This document shows, piece by piece, positions 6,656 through 15,723 of a DNA stretch of 64,000 nucleotides (the first letter of the stretch is position 1; every line of letters starts with the position of its first letter). Made by a program: the position numbers and the translations under genes. Location: IMG/VR virus record IMGVR_UViG_3300027996_002186, positions 124,001 through 188,000 of that record; one strand, written 5' to 3'. Under the pieces are notes generated by a model. The model was not told the origin of the DNA. It made no database searches and saw only the letters and a program-made list of their open reading frames with translations.

Positions 6656-7006
6656 ATGAGAATTTTCAGAAAAAGTAAAAAAGAACTTAGTGGTGATGTA
6701 AAACCTATGGGTATTAAATATACAATAGAAAGACCAAGTGAGTCTGATATTGCTAACTTACAGAGGCAAAGAGAAAATATGAAAAAGCCAATTACTAATA
6801 AGGTTGATAAGATGATTTTACAGGATATTTCGGATAGATTATATGGTCCTGATTCTGATGATTATATTAAATCGTTGAATAAATTGAATAAATTATTTAA
6901 ACCTAGAGCTGGAAAATCATGTAATGATTTCTTTGATCCAGATATAGTGGAGAATGTCAAGAAAAACCAGAAAAAAATAAATGAAATAATAAAACACGAG
7001 TCTTAG
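6656..7006 (+). CDS. Hypothetical protein (116 aa)
   Basis: ORF; C-terminal QKKINEII weakly resembles the recurring motif. Confidence 0.65.
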   Translation: MRIFRKSKKELSGDVKPMGIKYTIERPSESDIANLQRQRENMKKPITNKVDKMILQDISDRLYGPDSDDYIKSLNKLNKLFKPRAGKSCNDFFDPDIVENVKKNQKKINEIIKHES

Positions 7007-7019
7007 CTCGTGTTTTTTT
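6991..7019 (+). terminator. Intrinsic terminator
   Basis: aaaacacgag/ctcgtgtttt stem plus T-run. Confidence 0.75.
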
Positions 7020-7042
7020 GTTACAGGAGGTAGGTGTTAAAA

Positions 7043-7052
7043 TTAATATATA
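7043..7052 (+). promoter_or_regulatory. Putative late promoter core TTAATATATA
   Basis: 27 nt upstream of the portal ATG. Confidence 0.6.
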
Positions 7053-7079
7053 ACTTAAATTTTTAAATTATTTTAATAT

Positions 7080-8777
7080 ATGCCATCATATAATAACTTT
7101 AACGGAGCAGCAGGAGCAGATTCTAACTTCGCTGCTAGTAATTCAGCAGTTGAGAATAAAGGACTATTTAGTCGTATTCTAAGAAACCTTTCAAATTATG
7201 GTATGAACTATGATGATATGATCATCAGAAATCAAGTTGGTATCGGTATAAATGAGGATCCATATTCAGCTAGAGGTAATTCGATGTATGATTTCTTTAG
7301 TCAGAGAGCTGTGGCTTCTGTTTTGAATAGAAAGTCAATACCTTATCTAGATAAAGCATATGGTGATAAGAGAAGAATACTTAGAGAGTATTCTATTAAG
7401 GATGAAATAAGAGATTTTGTGAGTACTATATCGGATGAGTCTATTGTTTTTAATGATGATGTTGCCTTTTGCTCACCTAAATCACTATCAAATGAATATC
7501 CACAAGAAGTAAGAGATAAGTATCAAGAATATTTCGAAAAAATATACAATAAGTATGGATTTTCTGATGGTATTAGTGCTTGGGATATGATGAGAGATTT
7601 CCTTATTGATGGTTATATAGCTATTGAGATTATATATGATGATAAGAAAAAGAATATTGTTGGTTTCAATAGAATGAGACCAGAAACTTTAGTACCTGCT
7701 TATGAACCAGCTATTGGACACTTATGGATACAATTTCCAGAGGATCCACAATTAAGGAGAATATTTTTAGATTCACAAATAGTTTATATATCATATTCAA
7801 CACAGAATGATTATTCAGAAACTTCTTATGTTGAAGGTTTGATAAAACCATATAATCAATTAAAAATATTAGAACAAACTAGAATAATGTTCAATGTTAT
7901 AAACGCTACTCTTTATCAAAAATTTACAATTCCTATTAAAGGATTGTCTAGACAAAGAGCAGAAGAACAAATAGGTCAGTTAATACATGATTATTCAGAA
8001 GAAGTTGAGTGGGATGATAGTCTAGGAACACTTACTATCAATGGTGCTAAGCACTTACCTTACAATAAACAAATATGGTTTCCTGAGGGAGATGCTGGTA
8101 CTCCTAATATGGAGATGGTTTCACCAGAAGGTCATGATTTGAATGATGAAACTATGTTATCTTGGTTTTATAAGTCTCTTAAAAGAGCTTCTAAGATACC
8201 TATATCTAGATTCGAAGGTGAAAATGGTGGTGGTAACCTTTTTGGTGACGCTTCTGAGATGACTAGAGATGAGATTAAATTTCACAATTTTATTAGTAGA
8301 TTAAGAGCTAACTTTAAAGAACTTATTGTTAAGCCACTTAAATTACAAATGTTAATTGAGTTTCCTGAATTAACAGAGGATGAGGTATTTACTAATAGAG
8401 TTGATATTGACTTCTATACTAATCAAATATTTGAAGATTGGAAGAAGATAAATAACTTAGCTAAGAAATCAGAAATAGTTGGAACTTTATTAGGTGTTAT
8501 GAGAACAGATGAAAAACCTTATTTTCACATTGAGTGGATAATGGATAATATATTCAAGCTTACTCCAGAGGAGAAAGCTGAGAATGACAGGTATTGGGCT
8601 CGTGATGCTGGTGAAGGTGTTGGTTCTGGTGAAGAAGGCGCTGAAGGCGGAGATGATGGAGGCGACTTTGGTGAATCTGGTGATGTTGGTGGTGTAGATG
8701 ATGCTGGTGGTGGAGATGATGGTGGAGATGCTGGTGGAGATGCTGGTGGAGATGACGGTGGAGAATTTGAATTCTAA
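7080..8777 (+). CDS. gp20: Portal vertex protein (T4 gp20-like)
   Basis: FLIDG.IAIE, LIKPYNQLKILE, WFPEG, KSLKRASKIPISRF, TRDEIKFHNFI.RLR.NF; Gly/Asp-rich tail. Confidence 0.92.
   Translation: MPSYNNFNGAAGADSNFAASNSAVENKGLFSRILRNLSNYGMNYDDMIIRNQVGIGINEDPYSARGNSMYDFFSQRAVASVLNRKSIPYLDKAYGDKRRILREYSIKDEIRDFVSTISDESIVFNDDVAFCSPKSLSNEYPQEVRDKYQEYFEKIYNKYGFSDGISAWDMMRDFLIDGYIAIEIIYDDKKKNIVGFNRMRPETLVPAYEPAIGHLWIQFPEDPQLRRIFLDSQIVYISYSTQNDYSETSYVEGLIKPYNQLKILEQTRIMFNVINATLYQKFTIPIKGLSRQRAEEQIGQLIHDYSEEVEWDDSLGTLTINGAKHLPYNKQIWFPEGDAGTPNMEMVSPEGHDLNDETMLSWFYKSLKRASKIPISRFEGENGGGNLFGDASEMTRDEIKFHNFISRLRANFKELIVKPLKLQMLIEFPELTEDEVFTNRVDIDFYTNQIFEDWKKINNLAKKSEIVGTLLGVMRTDEKPYFHIEWIMDNIFKLTPEEKAENDRYWARDAGEGVGSGEEGAEGGDDGGDFGESGDVGGVDDAGGGDDGGDAGGDAGGDDGGEFEF
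8610..8774 (+). repeat. Low-complexity coding repeat (GGDA/GGDD units) at the portal C-terminus
   Basis: ggtggagatgct-type 12-mers. Confidence 0.8.
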
Positions 8778-8794
8778 AAGATATTTAAAAAAGG

Positions 8795-8826
8795 AAACCT
8801 CTTAAAATTAATTAAGAGGTTTTTTT
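8795..8826. terminator. Bidirectional intrinsic terminator
   Basis: aaacctcttaa/ttaagaggttt stem between convergent genes. Confidence 0.75.
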
Positions 8827-9280
8827 ATGCCGCAGTTTTTGGGTCGGGTATATCAAAGTAAAATTGTGTTACGCTATTACAACTTGGAAGTTTCATTTGT
8901 TTAACTTCTAGTAAACACCCCGATTCTAATATGTTTTTTAATTCTTTACCTTTTGGTGTATCTAGAACTTTTAATACTATTTTTAACTCATCCACTTTAT
9001 TATTCGTTATGATAAAAGACATTGACCTAACAAAAAATGATATACTTTTTAATAATATATCAGAATATTCTGGTTTTCCTAAACTACCATATACCGGACT
9101 ATTTATTTTTGATATTTCGGTTACGTCAAATCCAATCCTTTTACCTTCGTTTAATAAAACATTAAGTTTTATCTCACGTTTATATTGTATCCATTGTGGA
9201 AATTTAGTTAGTAATCGATCATAGTTATTTAACTCAACATCATTTCCTAAAACAACATTATATTCTAGTAAATCATCCAT
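8825..9280 (-). CDS. Catalytically dead paralog of the gp21-type prohead protease
   Basis: VYGSLGKPE vs own protease VYGEFDHPD; KVLDTPKGKELKNILESGC vs KLLSTYWGKEAKALVDDGC; the VSSR motif is absent. Confidence 0.55.
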   Translation of the reverse strand: MDDLLEYNVVLGNDVELNNYDRLLTKFPQWIQYKREIKLNVLLNEGKRIGFDVTEISKINSPVYGSLGKPEYSDILLKSISFFVRSMSFIITNNKVDELKIVLKVLDTPKGKELKNILESGCLLEVKQMKLPSCNSVTQFYFDIPDPKTAA

Positions 9281-11184
9281 TACATTTTTATGAAATCTAT
9301 TTGTTTCTTTTCTAAATCAACACCATTAACTATGATAGTTATCTCATCACCTAATCTGATTCTATCCCCAACATCATTAAAGATTTGATAGTTTTGTGTG
9401 TCTATATTATAATTACCTTCTAAAGATTGGTATCTTATCATACCCTCACATTTACTTTCTGTTAATTCAACATATAATCCCCAATCAGTTACACCAGAAA
9501 CTATCCCAGTGAATACTTTCCCAATTTTATCTAAAAGATATTCGGCTTGTTTGTATTTTATAGAATCTCTTTGGGCTCTGGATGCTATCAATTCTCTACT
9601 TGAACACCATTTAGCCTCATCTTCAACTTTAGTAGGGTTTCCTTGTTTCTTATTATGTAAGAAATCAAGTAACATTCTATGTGTCATTAAATCCGGATAC
9701 CTACGTATTGGACTTGTGAAGTGTGAATAGTGTGTGAATCCTAATCCATAATGTCCTATGTTTTGTATTGTGTATGTTGCTTTAGACATACATCTAGTTA
9801 CAACCGTACTTAACATATTTTCTTCTGGTGTTCCTTTAACATCTTGTAATAACTTGTTTATAGATTTTTTAAGATCTTCAGATTCGCCTTCTATTTTGAA
9901 TTCGTGACCAAAAGTCTTACACACATTTGATAATGCTGTTAACTTCTCCATATTAGGAGTATCATGTACTCTAAATACATTAGTTCTCGAATTACTTGAT
10001 AATAGTTTAGCAACAGATTTATTAGCTAGTAACATAAATTCTTCAATTAATTTATTAGCTTCTTTCTGTTCTTTGAAATAAACACCAATTGGTTTCTTAT
10101 TATCCTCTGCTAATTCGAATCGAACTTCCACACCACCCATCTCTAATGAACCGTCTTTAATTCTTTTCTTTCTTATTTTCTTAGCTAATGTGTTTAGATG
10201 ATTAATCATCAATGGATAAACACTACCATCACCTGTGTATTTTTCATCATTACCCTCGATTATCTCTTGAGCATCCTCATAAGCAAATCTCATATCAGAA
10301 TGTATGACTGTTTTACCGTGCCATTCTTTAACAATTTTACCATCCGAGTCTAGTGTAAATACAACTGAAAATGCTAACCTATCTTCATTAGGTTTTAATG
10401 AACATATTCCATTACTAAGTCTTTCTGGTAACATAGATACACATCTATCAACTAGATACACAGATGTTGCTCTTTCATAAGCTTCATCATCTAATTTAGT
10501 ACCAGGTTTAACATAGTGTCCAACATCAGCAATATGTACTCCTACTTCAAATCTATTATCATTCATTACTTTAAGTGATAATGCGTCATCAAAATCACGA
10601 GCATCTACTGGGTCGATTGTTATTGTTGTTGTATCTCTCATATCTCTACGAGATTTTATTTCCTTTTCGGTTATTACTTCTGGTGTGAGTTCTGATTCGT
10701 TTATAACATCTTGTGGAAAATCAACTGGTAATCCATATTCATACATTATCGAATTCATCTCAGCGTTATTATCACCAACATCTCCTAATATCTTAGTTAT
10801 CTTAGCTTGTGGGGATTTACTATCTACCCACTTTGTGAGTTCGACTATAACCTTTTGGTTATCTTCCGATTTTAATCCACCCTTGATATAGAAATCAACT
10901 GGTATTCTTTTATTATCTGCTATAACAAATGTTGATTTACCATTAATATGTACCTTACCAACGAATTCTTTCTTATTCCTTGATATTGTGTTAATTACTT
11001 TAGCTTCTAATTTCCTATCACCCCTAAATACTTCTACAATTACTTTATCTAAGTGTAAAGCATTTTTAGTATTCTTCTTATAAATGAAAATTGATTTATC
11101 GTTTATTGTGATTGTTGCGTGTCTGTTTGTTGAGAACTCTATTTGACCTTCGTAACGTTCTCCTTCTTTTATATTATTATTCAT
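9280..11184 (-). CDS. rnr: Ribonuclease R (RNB family, S1 C-terminus; N-terminal HTH absent)
   Basis: TIDPVDARDFDDALS, ATSVYLVDR..MLPE.LSN..CSL, LIEEFMLLAN, HFTSPIRRYPD. Frame is open to 11244; likely start MNNNIK at 11184. Confidence 0.95.
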   Translation of the reverse strand: MNNNIKEGERYEGQIEFSTNRHATITINDKSIFIYKKNTKNALHLDKVIVEVFRGDRKLEAKVINTISRNKKEFVGKVHINGKSTFVIADNKRIPVDFYIKGGLKSEDNQKVIVELTKWVDSKSPQAKITKILGDVGDNNAEMNSIMYEYGLPVDFPQDVINESELTPEVITEKEIKSRRDMRDTTTITIDPVDARDFDDALSLKVMNDNRFEVGVHIADVGHYVKPGTKLDDEAYERATSVYLVDRCVSMLPERLSNGICSLKPNEDRLAFSVVFTLDSDGKIVKEWHGKTVIHSDMRFAYEDAQEIIEGNDEKYTGDGSVYPLMINHLNTLAKKIRKKRIKDGSLEMGGVEVRFELAEDNKKPIGVYFKEQKEANKLIEEFMLLANKSVAKLLSSNSRTNVFRVHDTPNMEKLTALSNVCKTFGHEFKIEGESEDLKKSINKLLQDVKGTPEENMLSTVVTRCMSKATYTIQNIGHYGLGFTHYSHFTSPIRRYPDLMTHRMLLDFLHNKKQGNPTKVEDEAKWCSSRELIASRAQRDSIKYKQAEYLLDKIGKVFTGIVSGVTDWGLYVELTESKCEGMIRYQSLEGNYNIDTQNYQIFNDVGDRIRLGDEITIIVNGVDLEKKQIDFIKM

Positions 11185-11194
11185 ATTCCTTTTA

Positions 11195-11596
11195 TTAGGA
11201 AATATCGTTTTGTTTATTATCGCGTTTGGATATGTTGTCAACACCGTACTTATCTATAAGTGTTTTTTTCATTTTTTTCAATATTTTATTGTTTTGTATT
11301 GGATAGTCAACACCGTAATTTTCTCTTAATGATTTTTTCCTTTTTGATTCTGAGCATTTTCTACAAGAGTATTCACCCCAGTTATTATCATATTTAATAT
11401 AGTTCTTGAATATTACATCCTTTTCGATTCCACATTTATCACACTTACACTTTATTTTATAGTGGGATCCTTTGGATAGTAATTCAACTGGTATTATTAA
11501 TAATTCACCAATTGTAACATCACTATATCCTAGATTTTCATAGTATGAATAGTTTGCTTCGCTTATTTTAACTTTTATCTCTCTAGTTATTATCAT
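11195..11596 (-). CDS. Zn-binding protein with YGVD repeats typical of phage homing-endonuclease N-termini, no nuclease domain
   Basis: CKCDKC, CRKC, ENYGVDYP, DKYGVDNIS. Confidence 0.5.
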   Translation of the reverse strand: MIITREIKVKISEANYSYYENLGYSDVTIGELLIIPVELLSKGSHYKIKCKCDKCGIEKDVIFKNYIKYDNNWGEYSCRKCSESKRKKSLRENYGVDYPIQNNKILKKMKKTLIDKYGVDNISKRDNKQNDIS

Positions 11597-11686
11597 AAAA
11601 AACCTCAAAATTTTAATTATTTATTAAATATGTGTTGTCCTCTTCCCGTACTCACCAAACCTTCTTTAATAAAAGATTATAGAGCC

Positions 11687-11739
11687 TCTGTAAAGAATCC
11701 ACCTTTGTTATTTTTAGAATTTACATTGTCAATATATAC
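11687..11739 (+). promoter_or_regulatory. Strong late promoter with upstream box TCTGTAAAGAATCCACCTT and TATATAC core
   Basis: The 19-nt box is identical to 13910-13928; AATCCA lies 37 nt upstream of TATATAC. Confidence 0.7.
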
Positions 11740-11765
11740 TAAGAAGCAAAAAATAATTATTTTAC

Positions 11766-13907
11766 ATGAAACCGGTTTTAATAGTAGAAAATTCACAAAA
11801 CCAACTTATTAGAGAGAGTAACTCTGCTAATAAGGGGTACACATTAGGTGGTACATTCACCGAATTCGGTGTCAAGAACAGAAATGAACGTATTTATTCG
11901 GCTGATAAATTTTTACCAGCATTGAATGAAATGAATGAACGTATAAGTGGCTTAGGTGCTGTTTATGGTGAATTCGATCATCCAGACGTTTTTGACACAT
12001 CACTCTCAAGAGCCTCGCATATTATCACAAAGGCAAGTTATATCCAAGAGAAAAATATCGTAGCGGGAGAGATTAAATTACTAAGTACTTACTGGGGTAA
12101 GGAAGCAAAAGCACTTGTCGATGACGGGTGTCCTGTATTCGTTTCTTCAAGAGCTGCTGGTATTACTGAATCTGATGGTTCAGTTTCCCTTAAAAAATTA
12201 TTTACTTATGACATTGTTGCTGACCCAGGATTTGCGTCAGCTAAAATGGATGTTAAGGTACTTAATGAGTCATTGGGATATAATGACGAAAAATCTAACT
12301 TTAGGATATATGAAATGTCCGATGAGTCAAAAATAAATGAGTTATTCAATATGAACAAAAATGAGTTTGTAACAAAAAAACAATTGACTGACTACTCTAA
12401 CTACTTAGTTAACGAATTAGCATCAACTAAGAAGACAGTTAATACAGCCATTACTAAAGGTAATGTAGCTCCAAAGAAATTGGAACAATTATTAGAGTAT
12501 TATGAAGAGTTAAACAACTCTAATTCAAAAGTAGCTAAGTATCTTGATTATTTATCAGAAAAGGTACAAATAGTAGTTAATGAGAATAAATCATTAAAGA
12601 AGACAACTGAGAAATTAGTTAAACATAATGATTATTTAGCAGAAAACTTAGAGAAATCTATTAATTACGCTGAGTATTTAGGTGAAAACTTAGATAAGAA
12701 CATTGATTATTCTGAGTATTTAGCTGAGAATTTAGACAAGAACATATCTTATGCTGAGTATTTAGCTGAGAATGTTGATAAAAACATTTCATATTCTGAG
12801 TATTTAGCTGAGAGTTTAGATAAGAACATTGCTTATTCTGAATATATCGCTGAGAATTTAGACAAAAACATCGCTTATTCTGAGTATATCGCTGAGAATT
12901 TAGACAAAAACATTGCTTACTCTGAGTATATCGCAGAAAACGTTGATAATAATATCGCTTATTCTGAATACTTATCTGAGCATGTTGAAGGTAACATTGC
13001 TTACTCTGAGTATATCGCAGAACATTTAGATGATAACATCGCTTATTCTGAGTATGTAGCAGAGAATCTTGACAAATCAATTAATTATCAAGGATTGATA
13101 GTTGAGAGATTAAACGGAGATAAATTATTTGAATCTGTTGAAGGATCTGAAAGCTTCCCATCTCTAGACGATGCTGGTTTTGAAGCTTTTGATGATGAAG
13201 AAAACAAAGATGAAGAAAATTGTAATCTTGAAGTATCATTAGATAATAATGATGAAGAAAATGGTGTTGAAGAATCTGTTGAGAATACAGATGATTACGC
13301 AACAGAAGAAAACAAAGATGAAGAAAATAAAGATGAAGAAAACAAAGAAGATAAAACTGAAAGCCATGATATGGTAAACGGTGATAGTGATTCTGAATTA
13401 TCTGAATCTATTGATAAACTAATTGAAGAAGCTAAAAAACGAAAAGTTTCTGAAACAACAGATGTGAATTTCTTGAAGTTCATGTCTAAATCACAAGTTG
13501 ACAGCTTTTACGCTTTGTCAAATGACGAACAAGAGTCAGTTAAAGTCCATATAAACGAAAGAGACTACTTTACTCAAAAAGATGTTTTGTTATTGATATC
13601 TGAAGCACTATCAACTAAGAACGAATCTCTTGAAGAGAGAATAATCAGATTGATGCCTGAAAACACAAAGCCAATCTGGGAACAATTAAACGACACTTCT
13701 AAGAAATCTATCTTGTCACAAGCTAGATTATATCCAGAAGACGTTTTAACTACTGAGGCACAAGTTGAACATTTTTGGTCAACTAGAAAGCTAAAGACAA
13801 ATGAGTCTGTAACAAAGAAACTTGTATCACATGAAAGCCTTATCCAAGAAGATAAACTTTCAGATAATGATGTTCAAGCGATAATGGAAAGATTCAAAAA
13901 TATTTAA
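11766..13907 (+). CDS. gp21: Prohead core protease (gp21-like) fused to scaffold protein (gp22-like)
   Basis: GVKNRNERIY, YGEFDHP, VSSRAAG, TYDIVADPGF, then coiled-coil 14-aa repeats and an acidic region; directly upstream of the MCP. Confidence 0.88.
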   Translation: MKPVLIVENSQNQLIRESNSANKGYTLGGTFTEFGVKNRNERIYSADKFLPALNEMNERISGLGAVYGEFDHPDVFDTSLSRASHIITKASYIQEKNIVAGEIKLLSTYWGKEAKALVDDGCPVFVSSRAAGITESDGSVSLKKLFTYDIVADPGFASAKMDVKVLNESLGYNDEKSNFRIYEMSDESKINELFNMNKNEFVTKKQLTDYSNYLVNELASTKKTVNTAITKGNVAPKKLEQLLEYYEELNNSNSKVAKYLDYLSEKVQIVVNENKSLKKTTEKLVKHNDYLAENLEKSINYAEYLGENLDKNIDYSEYLAENLDKNISYAEYLAENVDKNISYSEYLAESLDKNIAYSEYIAENLDKNIAYSEYIAENLDKNIAYSEYIAENVDNNIAYSEYLSEHVEGNIAYSEYIAEHLDDNIAYSEYVAENLDKSINYQGLIVERLNGDKLFESVEGSESFPSLDDAGFEAFDDEENKDEENCNLEVSLDNNDEENGVEESVENTDDYATEENKDEENKDEENKEDKTESHDMVNGDSDSELSESIDKLIEEAKKRKVSETTDVNFLKFMSKSQVDSFYALSNDEQESVKVHINERDYFTQKDVLLLISEALSTKNESLEERIIRLMPENTKPIWEQLNDTSKKSILSQARLYPEDVLTTEAQVEHFWSTRKLKTNESVTKKLVSHESLIQEDKLSDNDVQAIMERFKNI
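12627..13088 (+). repeat. 11 tandem 42-nt coding repeats (SEYIAENLDKNIAY consensus)
   Basis: 462 nt = 11 x 42, in frame, synonymous variation, no spacers. Confidence 0.92.
13305..13349 (+). repeat. 3 x 15-nt coding repeat (EENKD)
   Basis: gaagaaaa(c/t)aaagat units. Confidence 0.8.
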
Positions 13908-13992: not shown

Positions 13993-15723
13993 ATGTCACA
14001 CATTAGAATAGACAAACAAAAAGCTATGAAGAAATGGTCTCCAGTATTAGAGAACATGGGAGTTGCTGGTGAAGATAGATTGGATTGGATGTCAGAATAT
14101 GCTGAATTTCACTCAATCAATGAAAACGCTTACGCAAACGCTTCAAACGTATCGGGTATGGGAGCTGTAGTAGCTGCACAACCTAATTCATTAGCTGGTA
14201 ACACAATTGGCAATTACGCTGACTCAACTGGTTCAGGTGATGTTGGTCAAAACCTTTTACCGGTAGCGATGAAAATAGCAGCTCAAACAATCGGTTTAGA
14301 TTTAGTAGCTGTTAAACCTTCTCCAGGTCCAAAAATTGATTTATTATATATCGACTTTAGATATGATGATGCTCATTTAGGAGATTCAGACGAAAGACCA
14401 CAAGTCTTTAAGATTGCACCAAACGCTACATTTTTAACTACTGGTGCTGGTGGTATGACAGCAGTTATCGCTGGATTAAGAGCTCAATTAGCTACGAATA
14501 CAATCACTGAAACAGTTGGTGGTTTAACTGGTAGAATGTGGAATGATATCACAGATGGTTCAGATGTAGTTGTAGAACCAACACCTTCAAAAGAAGGAAA
14601 AGTTGAATTTTTAGGATTCTCTAGAATTGATGGTTATCCAATGTTCAGAGCTTACAGACAGATGAATACATCTCACACAGATGTTGGTTCAGCTCAAGCA
14701 AACTGGGGATTTGACCCGACTAGAAACACATTTAGTCCTACAATGTCAATGGCTTCTCAAATTACTGATTTAGGAGATGTTACTTTAACTGATGAGCCTA
14801 CTATTGAATTAGTATCAGCTCTTGAAGATCACATTCCTGGTTTCTCTGCAAACTGGATGTCGGATGCTACTGGCCCTGCTGGTAACTATCCAATGGATAG
14901 AGAAATGGACGATAAAAGATACTCTGGTATCATCGGACCAAAAATTAGTTCTAAAACAGTTGCCGTAGGTACTATTGAAGTATCTTCAGCTCTTAGAAGA
15001 ACTGAAATTGAAGATATCAAAGCTAACACTGGTATGGATATCGTTCAAAAAATGGAGTCAATTCTTGTTAATGAATTATCTCAAACAATCTCTAAGCAAA
15101 TTGTTGCTAAGATATTTGAAATGGGTTCACTTAACAGATTATCTGCACCAGCTTATGTTGGAACAGCACCGGCACCATTAGCGGGACAAACAATCTTTGA
15201 CTTAAACACAGCTTATGCAACTGTTGCTGCTGGTAATGGAAACGTTGGTGGTGAAACTACACACGCTGTTCAAAGAAAGCTTGTAACTAAGATAGCTCAC
15301 GCTTCTAACTACATCGCTACAGAGGGACGTGTTGGTCCAGCTCAATACCTTATTACAAATGGGGGATTAGCAGCAGCACTTTCTGATATCTCTGGTTATA
15401 CAATTAACCCAGTGAAATCAAAAATCAATGGTCAAGGTCAATTATACCCAGTAGGTTCAATTGGAGATATTTCAATATATGTTGATCCATATATGAGATA
15501 TAACGACAATAGAATTGCTCTTGGTAGAAAGAACAATCCAGATCAACCAGGTATTATTTTTGTACCTTACTTAATGGCTCAGTCTATATCTGTAATTTCT
15601 GAAGCGACTTTCGCTCCTAGAATGTTACTAAGATCTAGATACGCTGTAACAGAAGTTGGTTGGTTCCCACAAAAACAATTTATGACTATCGAAGTTACAG
15701 ATGTGAATACACTTCTTAACTAA
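13993..15723 (+). CDS. gp23: Major capsid protein (T4 gp23-like)
   Basis: KKWSPVLE, IAAQTIGLDLVAVKP, ILVNELSQTISKQIV, IYVDPY, FVPY, TFAPRMLLRSRYA; follows protease/scaffold. Confidence 0.92.
   Translation: MSHIRIDKQKAMKKWSPVLENMGVAGEDRLDWMSEYAEFHSINENAYANASNVSGMGAVVAAQPNSLAGNTIGNYADSTGSGDVGQNLLPVAMKIAAQTIGLDLVAVKPSPGPKIDLLYIDFRYDDAHLGDSDERPQVFKIAPNATFLTTGAGGMTAVIAGLRAQLATNTITETVGGLTGRMWNDITDGSDVVVEPTPSKEGKVEFLGFSRIDGYPMFRAYRQMNTSHTDVGSAQANWGFDPTRNTFSPTMSMASQITDLGDVTLTDEPTIELVSALEDHIPGFSANWMSDATGPAGNYPMDREMDDKRYSGIIGPKISSKTVAVGTIEVSSALRRTEIEDIKANTGMDIVQKMESILVNELSQTISKQIVAKIFEMGSLNRLSAPAYVGTAPAPLAGQTIFDLNTAYATVAAGNGNVGGETTHAVQRKLVTKIAHASNYIATEGRVGPAQYLITNGGLAAALSDISGYTINPVKSKINGQGQLYPVGSIGDISIYVDPYMRYNDNRIALGRKNNPDQPGIIFVPYLMAQSISVISEATFAPRMLLRSRYAVTEVGWFPQKQFMTIEVTDVNTLLN

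What the first reader, a model, noticed from the sequence alone, without database searches (positions are those of the whole stretch)
8825..9280. Catalytically dead copy of the prohead protease
Seen: VYGSLGKPE aligns with the protease's VYGEFDHPD (His to Lys), KVLDTPKGKELKNILESGCLLEV aligns with KLLSTYWGKEAKALVDDGCPVFV, and the following VSSR serine motif is replaced by VKQM. It carries REIKLNVLL and is encoded antisense to the head operon, downstream of RNase R. Inference: a pseudo-protease acting as an inhibitor/timer of head maturation (analogous in role to T4 Inh) or as a decoy.
Basis: partly seen in the sequence, partly recalled or inferred. Interest (0 to 1): 0.6.

Follow-up and report, generated by a model that had tools for sequence, protein, structure and literature searches.

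The report
Dead copy of capsid protease
A marine giant phage carries, next to its capsid genes, a small, conserved but fast-evolving gene whose product has the fold of the phage's own capsid-maturation protease but has lost the catalytic residues; it probably acts by binding, and what it binds is still open.

Summary

The catalytic His and Ser positions are Lys69 and Lys127. Across 114 family members these columns hold no His and almost no Ser, and they are the least conserved part. The gene is real: 146 clusters at 50% identity, dN/dS 0.12-0.39, fixed synteny, a one-base stop/start overlap with RNase R, and a terminator. It evolves far faster than its neighbours.

The family is absent from Pfam and PHROGs. 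Short prohead-protease paralogues of unknown function are already known in phiKZ-like phages (SPN3US gp117), but this family shows no sequence link to gp117.

The inhibitor/timer idea stays an inference. A predicted complex with the protease domain gave only weak support (0.36 against 0.00 for controls). A family-specific conserved helix and a C-terminal Ala-Ala tail are new leads.

The parts
8825..9280 (-). Pseudo-protease gene (151 aa plus stop): stand-alone, catalytically dead paralogue of the gp21-type protease domain
9074..9076 (-). Codon of Lys69, at the position of the catalytic His (protease H72, T4 gp21 H85)
   Evidence: Alignments. The family column holds D20/K17/E14/N14 and no His.
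8894..8905 (-). Codons of V126-K127-Q128-M129, replacing the protease's VSSR nucleophile motif (S127 corresponds to T4 S140)
   Evidence: Alignments. Family column 127 is K54/R10/N8, with Ser in only 5 of 114.
9131..9190 (-). Codons of residues 31-50, the family-specific helical segment with invariant Arg35 (includes REIKLNVLL); the most conserved part of the family
   Evidence: Per-column conservation is 2.3-2.7 bits here against 0.9-1.3 bits at the ex-active-site segments, and R35 is present in 114 of 114. The model shows helices at 28-35 and 37-45.
8795..8822 (.). Stem-loop terminator (11 pairs, flanked by A and T runs) between the convergent pseudo-protease and portal genes
9280..11184 (-). 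RNase R-type exoribonuclease gene. Its stop overlaps the pseudo-protease start by one base. The likely start is MNNNIK at 11184; the ORF lister begins at GTG 11244.
   Evidence: Pfam RNB 1e-110, CSD2 and S1. Junction sequence. Orthologue starts.
11195..11608 (-). First gene of the antisense operon: small zinc-finger protein matching only the N-terminal part of homing endonucleases (DUF7487)
   Evidence: Pfam DUF7487 6.3e-7, phrog_12131 homing endonuclease 1.4e-11 covering profile positions 1-127 of 313. dN/dS 0.04-0.09.
11766..13907 (+). Protease-scaffold fusion gene. Residues 1-175 (11766..12290) are the active gp21-type protease domain with H72 (11979..11981) and S127 (12144..12146). This is the parent of the paralogue.
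7080..8777 (+). T4-type portal gene, convergent with the pseudo-protease gene
   Evidence: Pfam Portal_T4 2e-56.
13993..15723 (+). gp23-type major capsid protein gene, downstream of the protease-scaffold gene
   Evidence: Pfam Gp23 2.7e-26.

Best explanation
Identity (shown). The gene encodes a stand-alone pseudo-protease. It is a duplicated, trimmed core of the phage's own gp21-type prohead protease domain, and it has lost the catalytic His and Ser (now Lys69 and Lys127). It also lacks the N-terminal strand that gp21 cleaves from itself, the hairpin after the Ser, and the whole scaffold part. It is the last gene of a three-gene antisense operon (homing-endonuclease-like protein, RNase R, pseudo-protease). 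That operon sits between the portal and protease-scaffold genes in one clade of marine huge phages. The gene is kept under purifying selection but evolves several times faster than its neighbours.

Mechanism (inferred). It works by binding, not by cleaving. The retained gp21 fold and a family-specific, strongly conserved basic helix (residues 31-50, invariant Arg35) would let it associate with the highly conserved protease domain or with the assembling prohead core. There it would act as a non-catalytic subunit that restrains or times protease self-association and activation. The Lys-x-Ala-Ala C-terminus found in many members may make it short-lived.

My confidence in the identity is about 0.95. 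My confidence that it regulates the protease is about 0.35.
For: Homology:
- BLASTP E 2e-6.
- hhalign prob 96%, E 1.5e-9 and 2.4e-9.
- The family profile hits the protease gene in its own genome and in four related genomes.

Fold:
- The model has pLDDT 77 and pTM 0.74.
- The best viral matches are prohead scaffold/protease fusions, E 1.9e-5.

Loss of catalysis:
- K69 and K127 occupy the positions that are mutated to Ala in the 5jbl construct.
- Only 1 of 114 members has both a His and a Ser anywhere near those columns.

A real gene:
- 146 clusters at 50% identity, nearly all 130-160 aa.
- dN/dS 0.12-0.39.
- Identical synteny in diverse members.
- One-base stop/start overlap and a terminator.

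Binding:
- Predicted complex with protease residues 1-175: median ipSAE 0.36 (runs 0.34, 0.36, 0.43), best of 3 controls 0.00, partner pLDDT at least 77, contact agreement at least 54%.
- By the tool's calibration, the mark was reached by 58 of 80 solved complexes and 2 of 110 mismatched pairs.
- At a score of 0.60 or under, it was reached by only 7 of those 80 solved complexes and by both mismatches. The verdict is therefore weak support.

Other:
- The most conserved surface is a family-specific helix, which fits a conserved partner such as the protease domain (over 85% identical across the clade).
- C-terminal Ala-Ala occurs in 27 of 114 members, and [AVIL]-Ala in 39 of 114, although Ala is only 1.7% of family residues.
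Against: - There is no experimental evidence of any interaction.
- The complex score is in the range the tool calls more often wrong than right. It may also merely reflect memory of the solved gp21 oligomer.
- The gene lies on the opposite strand from the head genes and is translationally coupled to RNase R or to the endonuclease-like gene. This suggests a different expression class and possibly a different job.
- The related huge phage LR756504 has no such paralogue, so it is not essential for this type of head.
- Its very fast evolution, against a nearly invariant protease domain, is not what a tight partner of that domain would be expected to show over its whole surface.
- Metatranscriptome contigs with exact matches cover the protease, portal and RNase R genes but not this gene. 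That result is uninformative, not negative.
Confidence: 0.45

Rival explanations
1. It is neo-functionalised outside head assembly. The dead protease fold is used as a binding scaffold for the other products of its operon or for a host target. Examples would be an adaptor or regulator of the phage RNase R, or a decoy or blocker for a host factor that recognises the prohead protease.
For: It is co-oriented and translationally coupled with RNase R or the endonuclease-like gene in every genome examined. It is antisense to the late head genes. Its fast, arms-race-like divergence gives 146 clusters at 50% identity, while the neighbours stay 75-95% identical. The conserved part is a basic helix that has no counterpart in the protease.
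Against: The gene persists, with the same one-base overlap, in LR756502, which has no RNase R, so RNase R cannot be an obligate partner. Its locus is always inside the head module. No nucleic-acid-binding or defence-related family matches were found.
Confidence: 0.25
2. It is a packaged prohead core or internal protein in the manner of the T4 internal proteins. It would be carried into the prohead, possibly cleaved at [L/I/V]-x-Glu sites, and either discarded or injected. On this reading its fast evolution reflects low constraint or host interaction.
For: It lies in the head module. The protease keeps a T4-like L-I-V-E|N N-terminus (invariant), which suggests [LIV]-x-E specificity as in T4 (ITE and LTE sites are quoted in PMC5694885). 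The small protein carries L-L-E (4-6) and L-N-E (43-45) motifs. T4 internal proteins are similarly variable (background knowledge).
Against: The Glu of the 43-45 motif is present in only about 60% of members. The N-terminal part is an integral strand and helices of the predicted fold, not a detachable targeting peptide. There is no scaffold-like or known capsid-targeting extension. No proteome exists for these uncultured phages.
Confidence: 0.15
3. It is a decaying remnant of a partial duplication of the protease gene, for example a by-product of homing-endonuclease activity at this insertion hot spot, and has no function.
For: The portal-protease gap is variable. It is empty in LR756501 and holds a 612-aa endonuclease-like ORF in LR756504. 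The paralogue is truncated relative to the protease domain.
Against: Intact ORFs of constant length are found in 146 divergent clusters. dN/dS is well below 1. Arg35 is invariant and the family has a conserved motif of its own. The model is confidently folded.
Confidence: 0.03
4. It is still an active peptidase that uses non-canonical residues.
For: The fold is retained. An acidic residue (D143) may correspond to the third triad residue. This position is not aligned by hhalign, and 37 of 114 members have Asp there.
Against: The columns that correspond to His and Ser, and the segments around them, are the least conserved in the family. No alternative conserved nucleophile/base pair is present.
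Confidence: 0.02

Closest known systems
T4 gp21 prohead protease (MEROPS/Pfam Peptidase S77; PDB 5jbl) and the protease domain of this phage's own protease-scaffold fusion
   Different: No catalytic His or Ser and no NRNxRxY motif. It lacks the self-cleaved N-terminal strand, the hairpin after the Ser, the C-terminal helices and the scaffold part. It has an extra conserved helical segment (residues 17-52). No Pfam S77 hit at E <= 1. It is therefore a non-peptidase homologue, not a member of the enzyme family.
SPN3US gp117, 201phi2-1 gp206 and PhiPA3 gp143: short diverged paralogues of the prohead protease in phiKZ-like giant phages (Ali et al. 2017, PMC5694885, section 17)
   Same: These are stand-alone proteins of about 136-161 aa. 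They are homologous to the phage's own prohead protease, lack its C-terminal targeting part, occur in giant phages, and have no known function. Foldseek also pairs the model with about 140-aa uncharacterised proteins of phiKZ-like phages.
   Different: No detectable sequence relation to gp117: hhalign of the family profile against gp117 gives E 0.8. An independent origin is therefore likely. gp117 was reported to keep the Ser and Asp, whereas here both His and Ser are gone throughout the family. The location also differs: inside the T4-type head module, antisense, and coupled to RNase R.
T4 Inh (inhibitor of the gp21 protease)
   Same: Only the proposed role: a phage protein that restrains the prohead protease.
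   Different: No homology was tested or claimed. As far as I know, Inh is not a gp21 paralogue. The comparison is an analogy, not a family assignment.
Regulatory dead paralogues of enzymes in general (for example the AdoMetDC prozyme, PMC5201418; the pseudo-caspase FLIP(L), PMC7586951; iRhom pseudoproteases)
   Same: A catalytically dead paralogue that keeps the fold and may act through association with the active enzyme.
   Different: Those cases have demonstrated complexes and effects. Here the association is only weakly predicted.

Membership tests
Peptidase S77 / gp21-type prohead serine protease | gp21/herpesvirus-assemblin-like fold | tested here: met
Peptidase S77 / gp21-type prohead serine protease | Catalytic histidine (T4 H85; H72 in this phage's protease) | tested here: not met
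   Lys69 occupies that position. The family column holds D/K/E/N and no His.
Peptidase S77 / gp21-type prohead serine protease | Nucleophilic serine (T4 S140; S127 of the VSSR motif here) | tested here: not met
   Lys127 occupies that position. The family column is K54/R10/N8, with Ser in 5 of 114.
Peptidase S77 / gp21-type prohead serine protease | Third triad residue (Asp; D149 in this phage's protease) | tested here: inconclusive
   The C-terminal strand is not aligned by hhalign. By eye, F-Y-F-D143 resembles F-T-Y-D149. Asp is present in only 37 of 114 members.
Peptidase S77 / gp21-type prohead serine protease | Match to the curated family model (Pfam PF03420, phrog_207) | tested here: not met
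   No Pfam hit at E <= 1 for P0001 or any of the 114 members. phrog_207 scores 0.38 for P0001 and matches weakly in 12 of 114 members, best 0.0021.
Giant-phage short prohead-protease paralogues (SPN3US gp117-like) | Stand-alone protein of about 140-160 aa, homologous to the phage's own prohead protease and lacking its C-terminal part | tested here: met
   151 aa, homology to the protease, no scaffold or targeting extension. The kind is described in PMC5694885.
Giant-phage short prohead-protease paralogues (SPN3US gp117-like) | Sequence relationship to gp117 and its homologues | tested here: not met
   hhalign of the 114-member family profile against SPN3US gp117 gives prob 0.05%, E 0.8.
Giant-phage short prohead-protease paralogues (SPN3US gp117-like) | Retention of the catalytic Ser and Asp, as reported for gp117 | tested here: not met
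   The Ser is replaced by Lys and the Asp is not conserved. gp117 features are as stated in PMC5694885.
T4 Inh-type protease inhibitor | Inhibition of the prohead protease | not testable with these tools
   There is only a weak predicted association with the protease domain.

The most novel reading that the evidence does not exclude
A phage-encoded dead paralogue of the capsid-maturation protease acts as a regulatory, short-lived subunit. It co-assembles with the active protease through the shared gp21 fold and a dedicated conserved helix, and keeps the protease off. It is then removed, possibly through its C-terminal Ala-Ala tail acting as a degradation signal. This would time capsid maturation in very large capsids. 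It would be the first known regulation of a prohead protease by its own pseudo-enzyme, and it would suggest a function for the orphan gp117-type paralogues of other giant phages.
Probability: 0.2. Interest if true: 0.7.

Novelty: new variant of a known kind. Interest (0 to 1): 0.5.

Why it matters
How prohead proteases are kept inactive until the shell is complete is only partly understood, even in T4. Giant capsids with thousands of cleavage events raise the problem more sharply. Short paralogues of the prohead protease were noticed in phiKZ-like phages in 2017 and have stayed without a function.

This work finds a second family that shows no sequence link to the first. It is clearly catalytically dead, large and strongly diversified. 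It sits inside the head module of marine huge phages. That suggests such pseudo-proteases are a recurrent solution in giant phages.

The work also gives concrete handles for testing what they do: a conserved helix, an invariant Arg, a C-terminal Ala-Ala tail and a defined candidate partner. The family is missing from Pfam and PHROGs, so these genes are currently annotated as hypothetical.

Tried and rejected
- **Family scans.** Pfam gave nothing for P0001 or for any of the 114 family members. PHROGs gave only weak phrog_207 hits.
- **Sequence search of the PDB.** The family profile gave only a chance-level Cmr6 hit, E 0.52. The single protease domain gave nothing meaningful. The protease profile reached 5jbl only at E 0.23; that alignment was useful for mapping residues, not as proof.
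- **ESM Atlas feature search.** No usable hit.
- **Genomic context of two intermediate-looking proteins.** P0268 has His changed to Gln with the Ser kept. P0274 has His changed to Ser. Their contigs were too short to be informative.
- **Metatranscriptome contigs.** Exact-match contigs cover the protease-scaffold, portal and RNase R genes but not 8825..9280. One contig of a relative (about 7% mismatches) spans 9186..9459, across the RNase R/pseudo-protease junction. Contigs show neither strand nor level, and RNA libraries can hold DNA, so expression and co-transcription stay unshown.
- **Cleavage-site idea.** I considered that the conserved L-L-x-E-G-K is a protease cleavage site. The Glu is present in only about 60% of members and the segment is a helix cap in the model, so I did not adopt this.
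- **Link to SPN3US gp117.** No sequence relation was found.
- **Pseudogene and active-enzyme readings.** Both were rejected on the conservation data.

Full report
**What is there**

The window is part of a marine huge phage. A 7-kb stretch around the finding is 82.5% identical in DNA to the 634,780-base uncultured phage LR745206. It is more distantly related to LR756502 (642 kb), LR756504 (636 kb) and LR756501/3 (735 kb). The window lies on a 76.9-kb virus contig. Near-identical DNA occurs in many marine and seawater metagenomes from 13 studies.

The local gene order is as follows:

| Gene | Coordinates | Strand |
|---|---|---|
| T4-type portal | 7080..8777 | + |
| the finding | 8825..9280 | - |
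| RNase R | 9280..11184 | - |
| small zinc-finger protein matching the N-terminal part of homing endonucleases (DUF7487) | 11195..11608 | - |
| protease-scaffold fusion | 11766..13907 | + |
| gp23-type major capsid protein | 13993..15723 | + |

**Checking the observation**

The ORF at 8825..9280(-) is real and encodes 151 aa (P0001). BLASTP against the first 200 residues of the protease-scaffold protein gives 33% identity over 61 residues, E 2e-6 for the pair.

Profile-profile comparison gives prob 96.3%, E 1.5e-9 with 13 family members. With 114 members it gives prob 96.2%, E 2.4e-9. The aligned ranges are P0001 60-129 and protease 63-129. A profile of the small-protein family finds the protease gene of its own genome at E 4.5e-8. 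It also finds the protease genes of the four related huge phages at 2e-6 to 9e-9.

In these alignments Lys69 stands opposite His72. V126-K127-Q128-M129 stand opposite V126-S127-S128-R129.

The protease profile aligns His72 and Ser127 with the two positions that are Ala in the crystallised T4 gp21 construct 5jbl. From my own knowledge, these are the inactivating H85A and S140A changes. PMC5694885 confirms that gp21 has a His/Ser/Asp triad.

**Fold**

Among predicted viral structures, the best matches are prohead core scaffold/protease fusions of Tenacibaculum phages, at E 1.9e-5. The whole protein is a trimmed gp21 core, not only the 65 residues that align by sequence.

I compared the two models' secondary structure. 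The paralogue lacks:
- the protease's first roughly 20 residues (in T4 this is the self-cleaved strand that blocks the active site; my own knowledge of Fokine and Rossmann 2016);
- the hairpin that follows the Ser;
- the C-terminal helices.

In place of the single long helix of the protease, it carries a longer helical segment plus a strand (residues 17-52).

**A real gene and a large family**

The word-based search found ten proteins of 69-99% identity. The exhaustive profile search of 1.84 billion cluster representatives found 146 clusters at E <= 0.001, of which 88 are at <= 1e-10. Nearly all are 130-160 aa. Neither Pfam nor PHROGs contains the family.

Synteny is fixed in every longer contig examined. 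The small gene follows RNase R and converges on the portal gene, with the protease-scaffold and capsid genes on the other side. In LR756502 RNase R is absent, and the small gene follows the endonuclease-like gene directly, again with a one-base overlap.

In the window, the RNase R stop and the P0001 start overlap as TAATG. An 11-pair stem-loop with flanking A and T runs lies between P0001 and the portal gene.

Pairwise dN/dS for the small gene is 0.12-0.39. For the protease domain, portal, RNase R and the endonuclease-like gene in the same genome pairs it is 0.04-0.16. Its amino-acid identity falls to 34-41% in genomes whose protease domain is still 79-89% identical. The gene is thus under purifying selection but diverges several times faster than its neighbours.

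**The family as a whole is catalytically dead**

The following comes from a 114-member alignment:
- The His-equivalent column holds Asp 20, Lys 17, Glu 14, Asn 14 and no His.
- The Ser-equivalent column holds Lys 54, Arg 10, Asn 8, with Ser in 5.
- Only one member has both a His and a Ser anywhere near these columns.
- The two ex-active-site segments are the least conserved parts, at about 0.9-1.3 bits per column.
- The most conserved part is the family-specific segment at residues 31-50 (2.3-2.7 bits).

Selection therefore acts on a new surface, not on the old catalytic groove. That argues against a substrate-mimicking decoy and for a binding function acquired after duplication.

**Related dead copies**

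LR756504 has no separate paralogue. LR756501 has none at this locus, but it carries another stand-alone 178-aa copy elsewhere (L022 1285..1821). That copy is much closer to the protease (E 2.7e-28) and has His changed to Tyr and Ser-Ser changed to Arg-Pro. Loss-of-catalysis copies of this protease have therefore arisen or been kept more than once in the group.

**What it probably does**

Nothing here measures function. The most economical reading is a non-catalytic subunit that associates with the active protease domain or with the prohead core and modulates activation. The protease domain is over 85% identical across more than 1,600 database proteins.

The single complex prediction allowed was protease residues 1-175 plus P0001, each with its own alignment. 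The results were:
- median ipSAE 0.36 (runs 0.34, 0.36 and 0.43), against 0.00 for the best of three controls;
- partner pLDDT at least 77, and contact agreement at least 54%.

The tool's verdict is weak support. The mark was reached by 58 of 80 solved complexes and 2 of 110 mismatched pairs. At 0.60 or under, only 7 of those 80 solved complexes reached it, as did both mismatches. The solved gp21 oligomer may also be remembered by the model. I count this as a small increment only.

A further lead is the C-terminus. Ala makes up only 1.7% of family residues. Yet 45 of 114 members end in Ala, 27 end in Ala-Ala, and 39 end in [AVIL]-Ala, usually preceded by Lys. Of 85 background ORFs in the window, only 1 ends in [AVIL]-Ala. 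From general knowledge, C-terminal Leu-Ala-Ala-like ends are recognised by ClpX. A built-in degradation signal would fit a timer, but this is untested speculation.

Four points count against the head-regulator reading:
- the gene's antisense orientation;
- its translational coupling to RNase R or the endonuclease-like gene;
- its absence from LR756504;
- its fast divergence.

I therefore keep three rivals open, besides a negligible active-enzyme reading (0.02): a role outside head assembly (0.25), a packaged or internal protein (0.15), and a functionless remnant (0.03). The main mechanism stands at about 0.35, and the identity at about 0.95.

**Expression**

Contigs from four marine metatranscriptomes were laid on 7001..13000. 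Exact-match contigs cover the protease-scaffold gene in three runs, part of the portal gene in one run, and part of RNase R in one run. None covers 8825..9280. One contig from a relative (20 mismatches in 274 bases) spans 9186..9459, across the RNase R/small-gene junction. Contigs show neither strand nor level, and RNA libraries can contain DNA. This neither shows nor excludes expression.

**Comparison with what is known**

Ali et al. 2017 (PMC5694885, section 17) reported a diverged paralogue of the prohead protease in the giant Salmonella phage SPN3US (gp117). They reported similar short proteins in 201phi2-1 (gp206, 145 aa) and PhiPA3 (gp143, 136 aa). They called a protease paralogue in a phage genome unprecedented, and its function remains unknown.

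The present family is the same kind of thing: a short stand-alone copy of the protease core without the targeting part, in a giant phage. It shows no sequence relation to gp117 (hhalign E 0.8). It also differs in two other ways. It has lost both His and Ser, whereas gp117 reportedly keeps Ser and Asp. And it sits inside a T4-type head module, in an antisense operon with RNase R.

It is not a member of peptidase family S77 in the enzymatic sense, because the fold is met but the catalytic residues and the family model are not. The comparison with T4 Inh is an analogy of the proposed role only.

**Verdict**

The inhibitor/timer interpretation is plausible but unproven.

On novelty, this is a new and unannotated variant of a kind first noticed in phiKZ-like phages. 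Interest is moderate (0.5). It would rise to about 0.7 if the regulatory-subunit mechanism were shown.

Noticed in passing
window 9280..11184 (-): This is a full-length RNase R-type exoribonuclease (RNB 1e-110, two cold-shock-like domains, S1) encoded by a phage, between the portal and protease genes. It is present in LR745206 and many metagenomic relatives but precisely absent from LR756502, where the flanking genes abut with the same one-base overlap.
   Followed up: partly
window 11195..11608 (-): This is a 133-137-aa zinc-finger protein that matches only the N-terminal, DNA-binding-like part of homing endonucleases (phrog_12131 positions 1-127 of 313; DUF7487). It has no nuclease domain, yet it is under the strongest purifying selection of the locus (dN/dS 0.04-0.09). 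It looks like a domesticated endonuclease fragment rather than a mobile gene.
   Followed up: partly
L003 4452..6290 (LR756504) and L004 4629..4747 (LR756501): The portal-protease gap is an insertion hot spot. LR756504 holds a 612-aa endonuclease-like ORF with the same repeated motifs there. In LR756501 the portal gene is followed directly by the protease gene.
   Followed up: partly
L022 1285..1821 (-) (LR756501 about 11.4-11.8 kb); also LR756501 240978..241175: This is a second, independent-looking dead copy of the protease (178 aa). His is changed to Tyr and Ser-Ser to Arg-Pro, but the NGRIY and RAAG motifs are kept. It matches the protease profile at E 2.7e-28 and lies far from the head module. 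An 84-aa ORF elsewhere in that genome matches protease residues 1-60 (E 7e-5).
   Followed up: partly
window 8825..8845 (-) and family-wide: A conserved C-terminal tail, Lys-x-[Ala/Val/Ile]-Ala, occurs in about a third of the family. 27 of 114 members end in Ala-Ala, although Ala is only 1.7% of family residues. It is reminiscent of ClpX-type C-terminal degradation signals. This was not tested.
   Followed up: partly
window 12629..13075 (+): The scaffold part of the protease-scaffold gene holds about 9.5-10.6 tandem copies of a 42-base unit, giving 14-residue repeats of the type N-I-A-Y-S-E-Y-I-A-E-N-L-D-K. An acidic stretch with 15-base repeats follows at 13305..13348. The total protein length varies (654-750 aa) among close relatives.
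   Followed up: partly
window about 8640..8774 (+): The portal protein ends in a long Gly/Asp/Glu-rich tail that finishes with E-F-E-F. The tail's composition changes between relatives (Gly/Asp here, Pro/Glu/Ala-rich elsewhere), but the aromatic-acidic end (EFEF, FDF) is kept.
   Followed up: no
P0268 (161 aa) and P0274 (157 aa), metagenomic proteins: These are short stand-alone protease-like proteins with partial loss of the triad. P0268 has His changed to Gln but keeps the Ser-Ser-Arg-Gly motif and a Pfam S77 hit. P0274 has His changed to Ser and has lost the Ser motif. They may be intermediates or further independent pseudo-proteases. Their contigs are too short to show context.
   Followed up: partly
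L013 6417..6851: In one relative, an extra 144-aa gene of unknown function sits between the pseudo-protease gene and the portal gene, overlapping the pseudo-protease stop.
   Followed up: no
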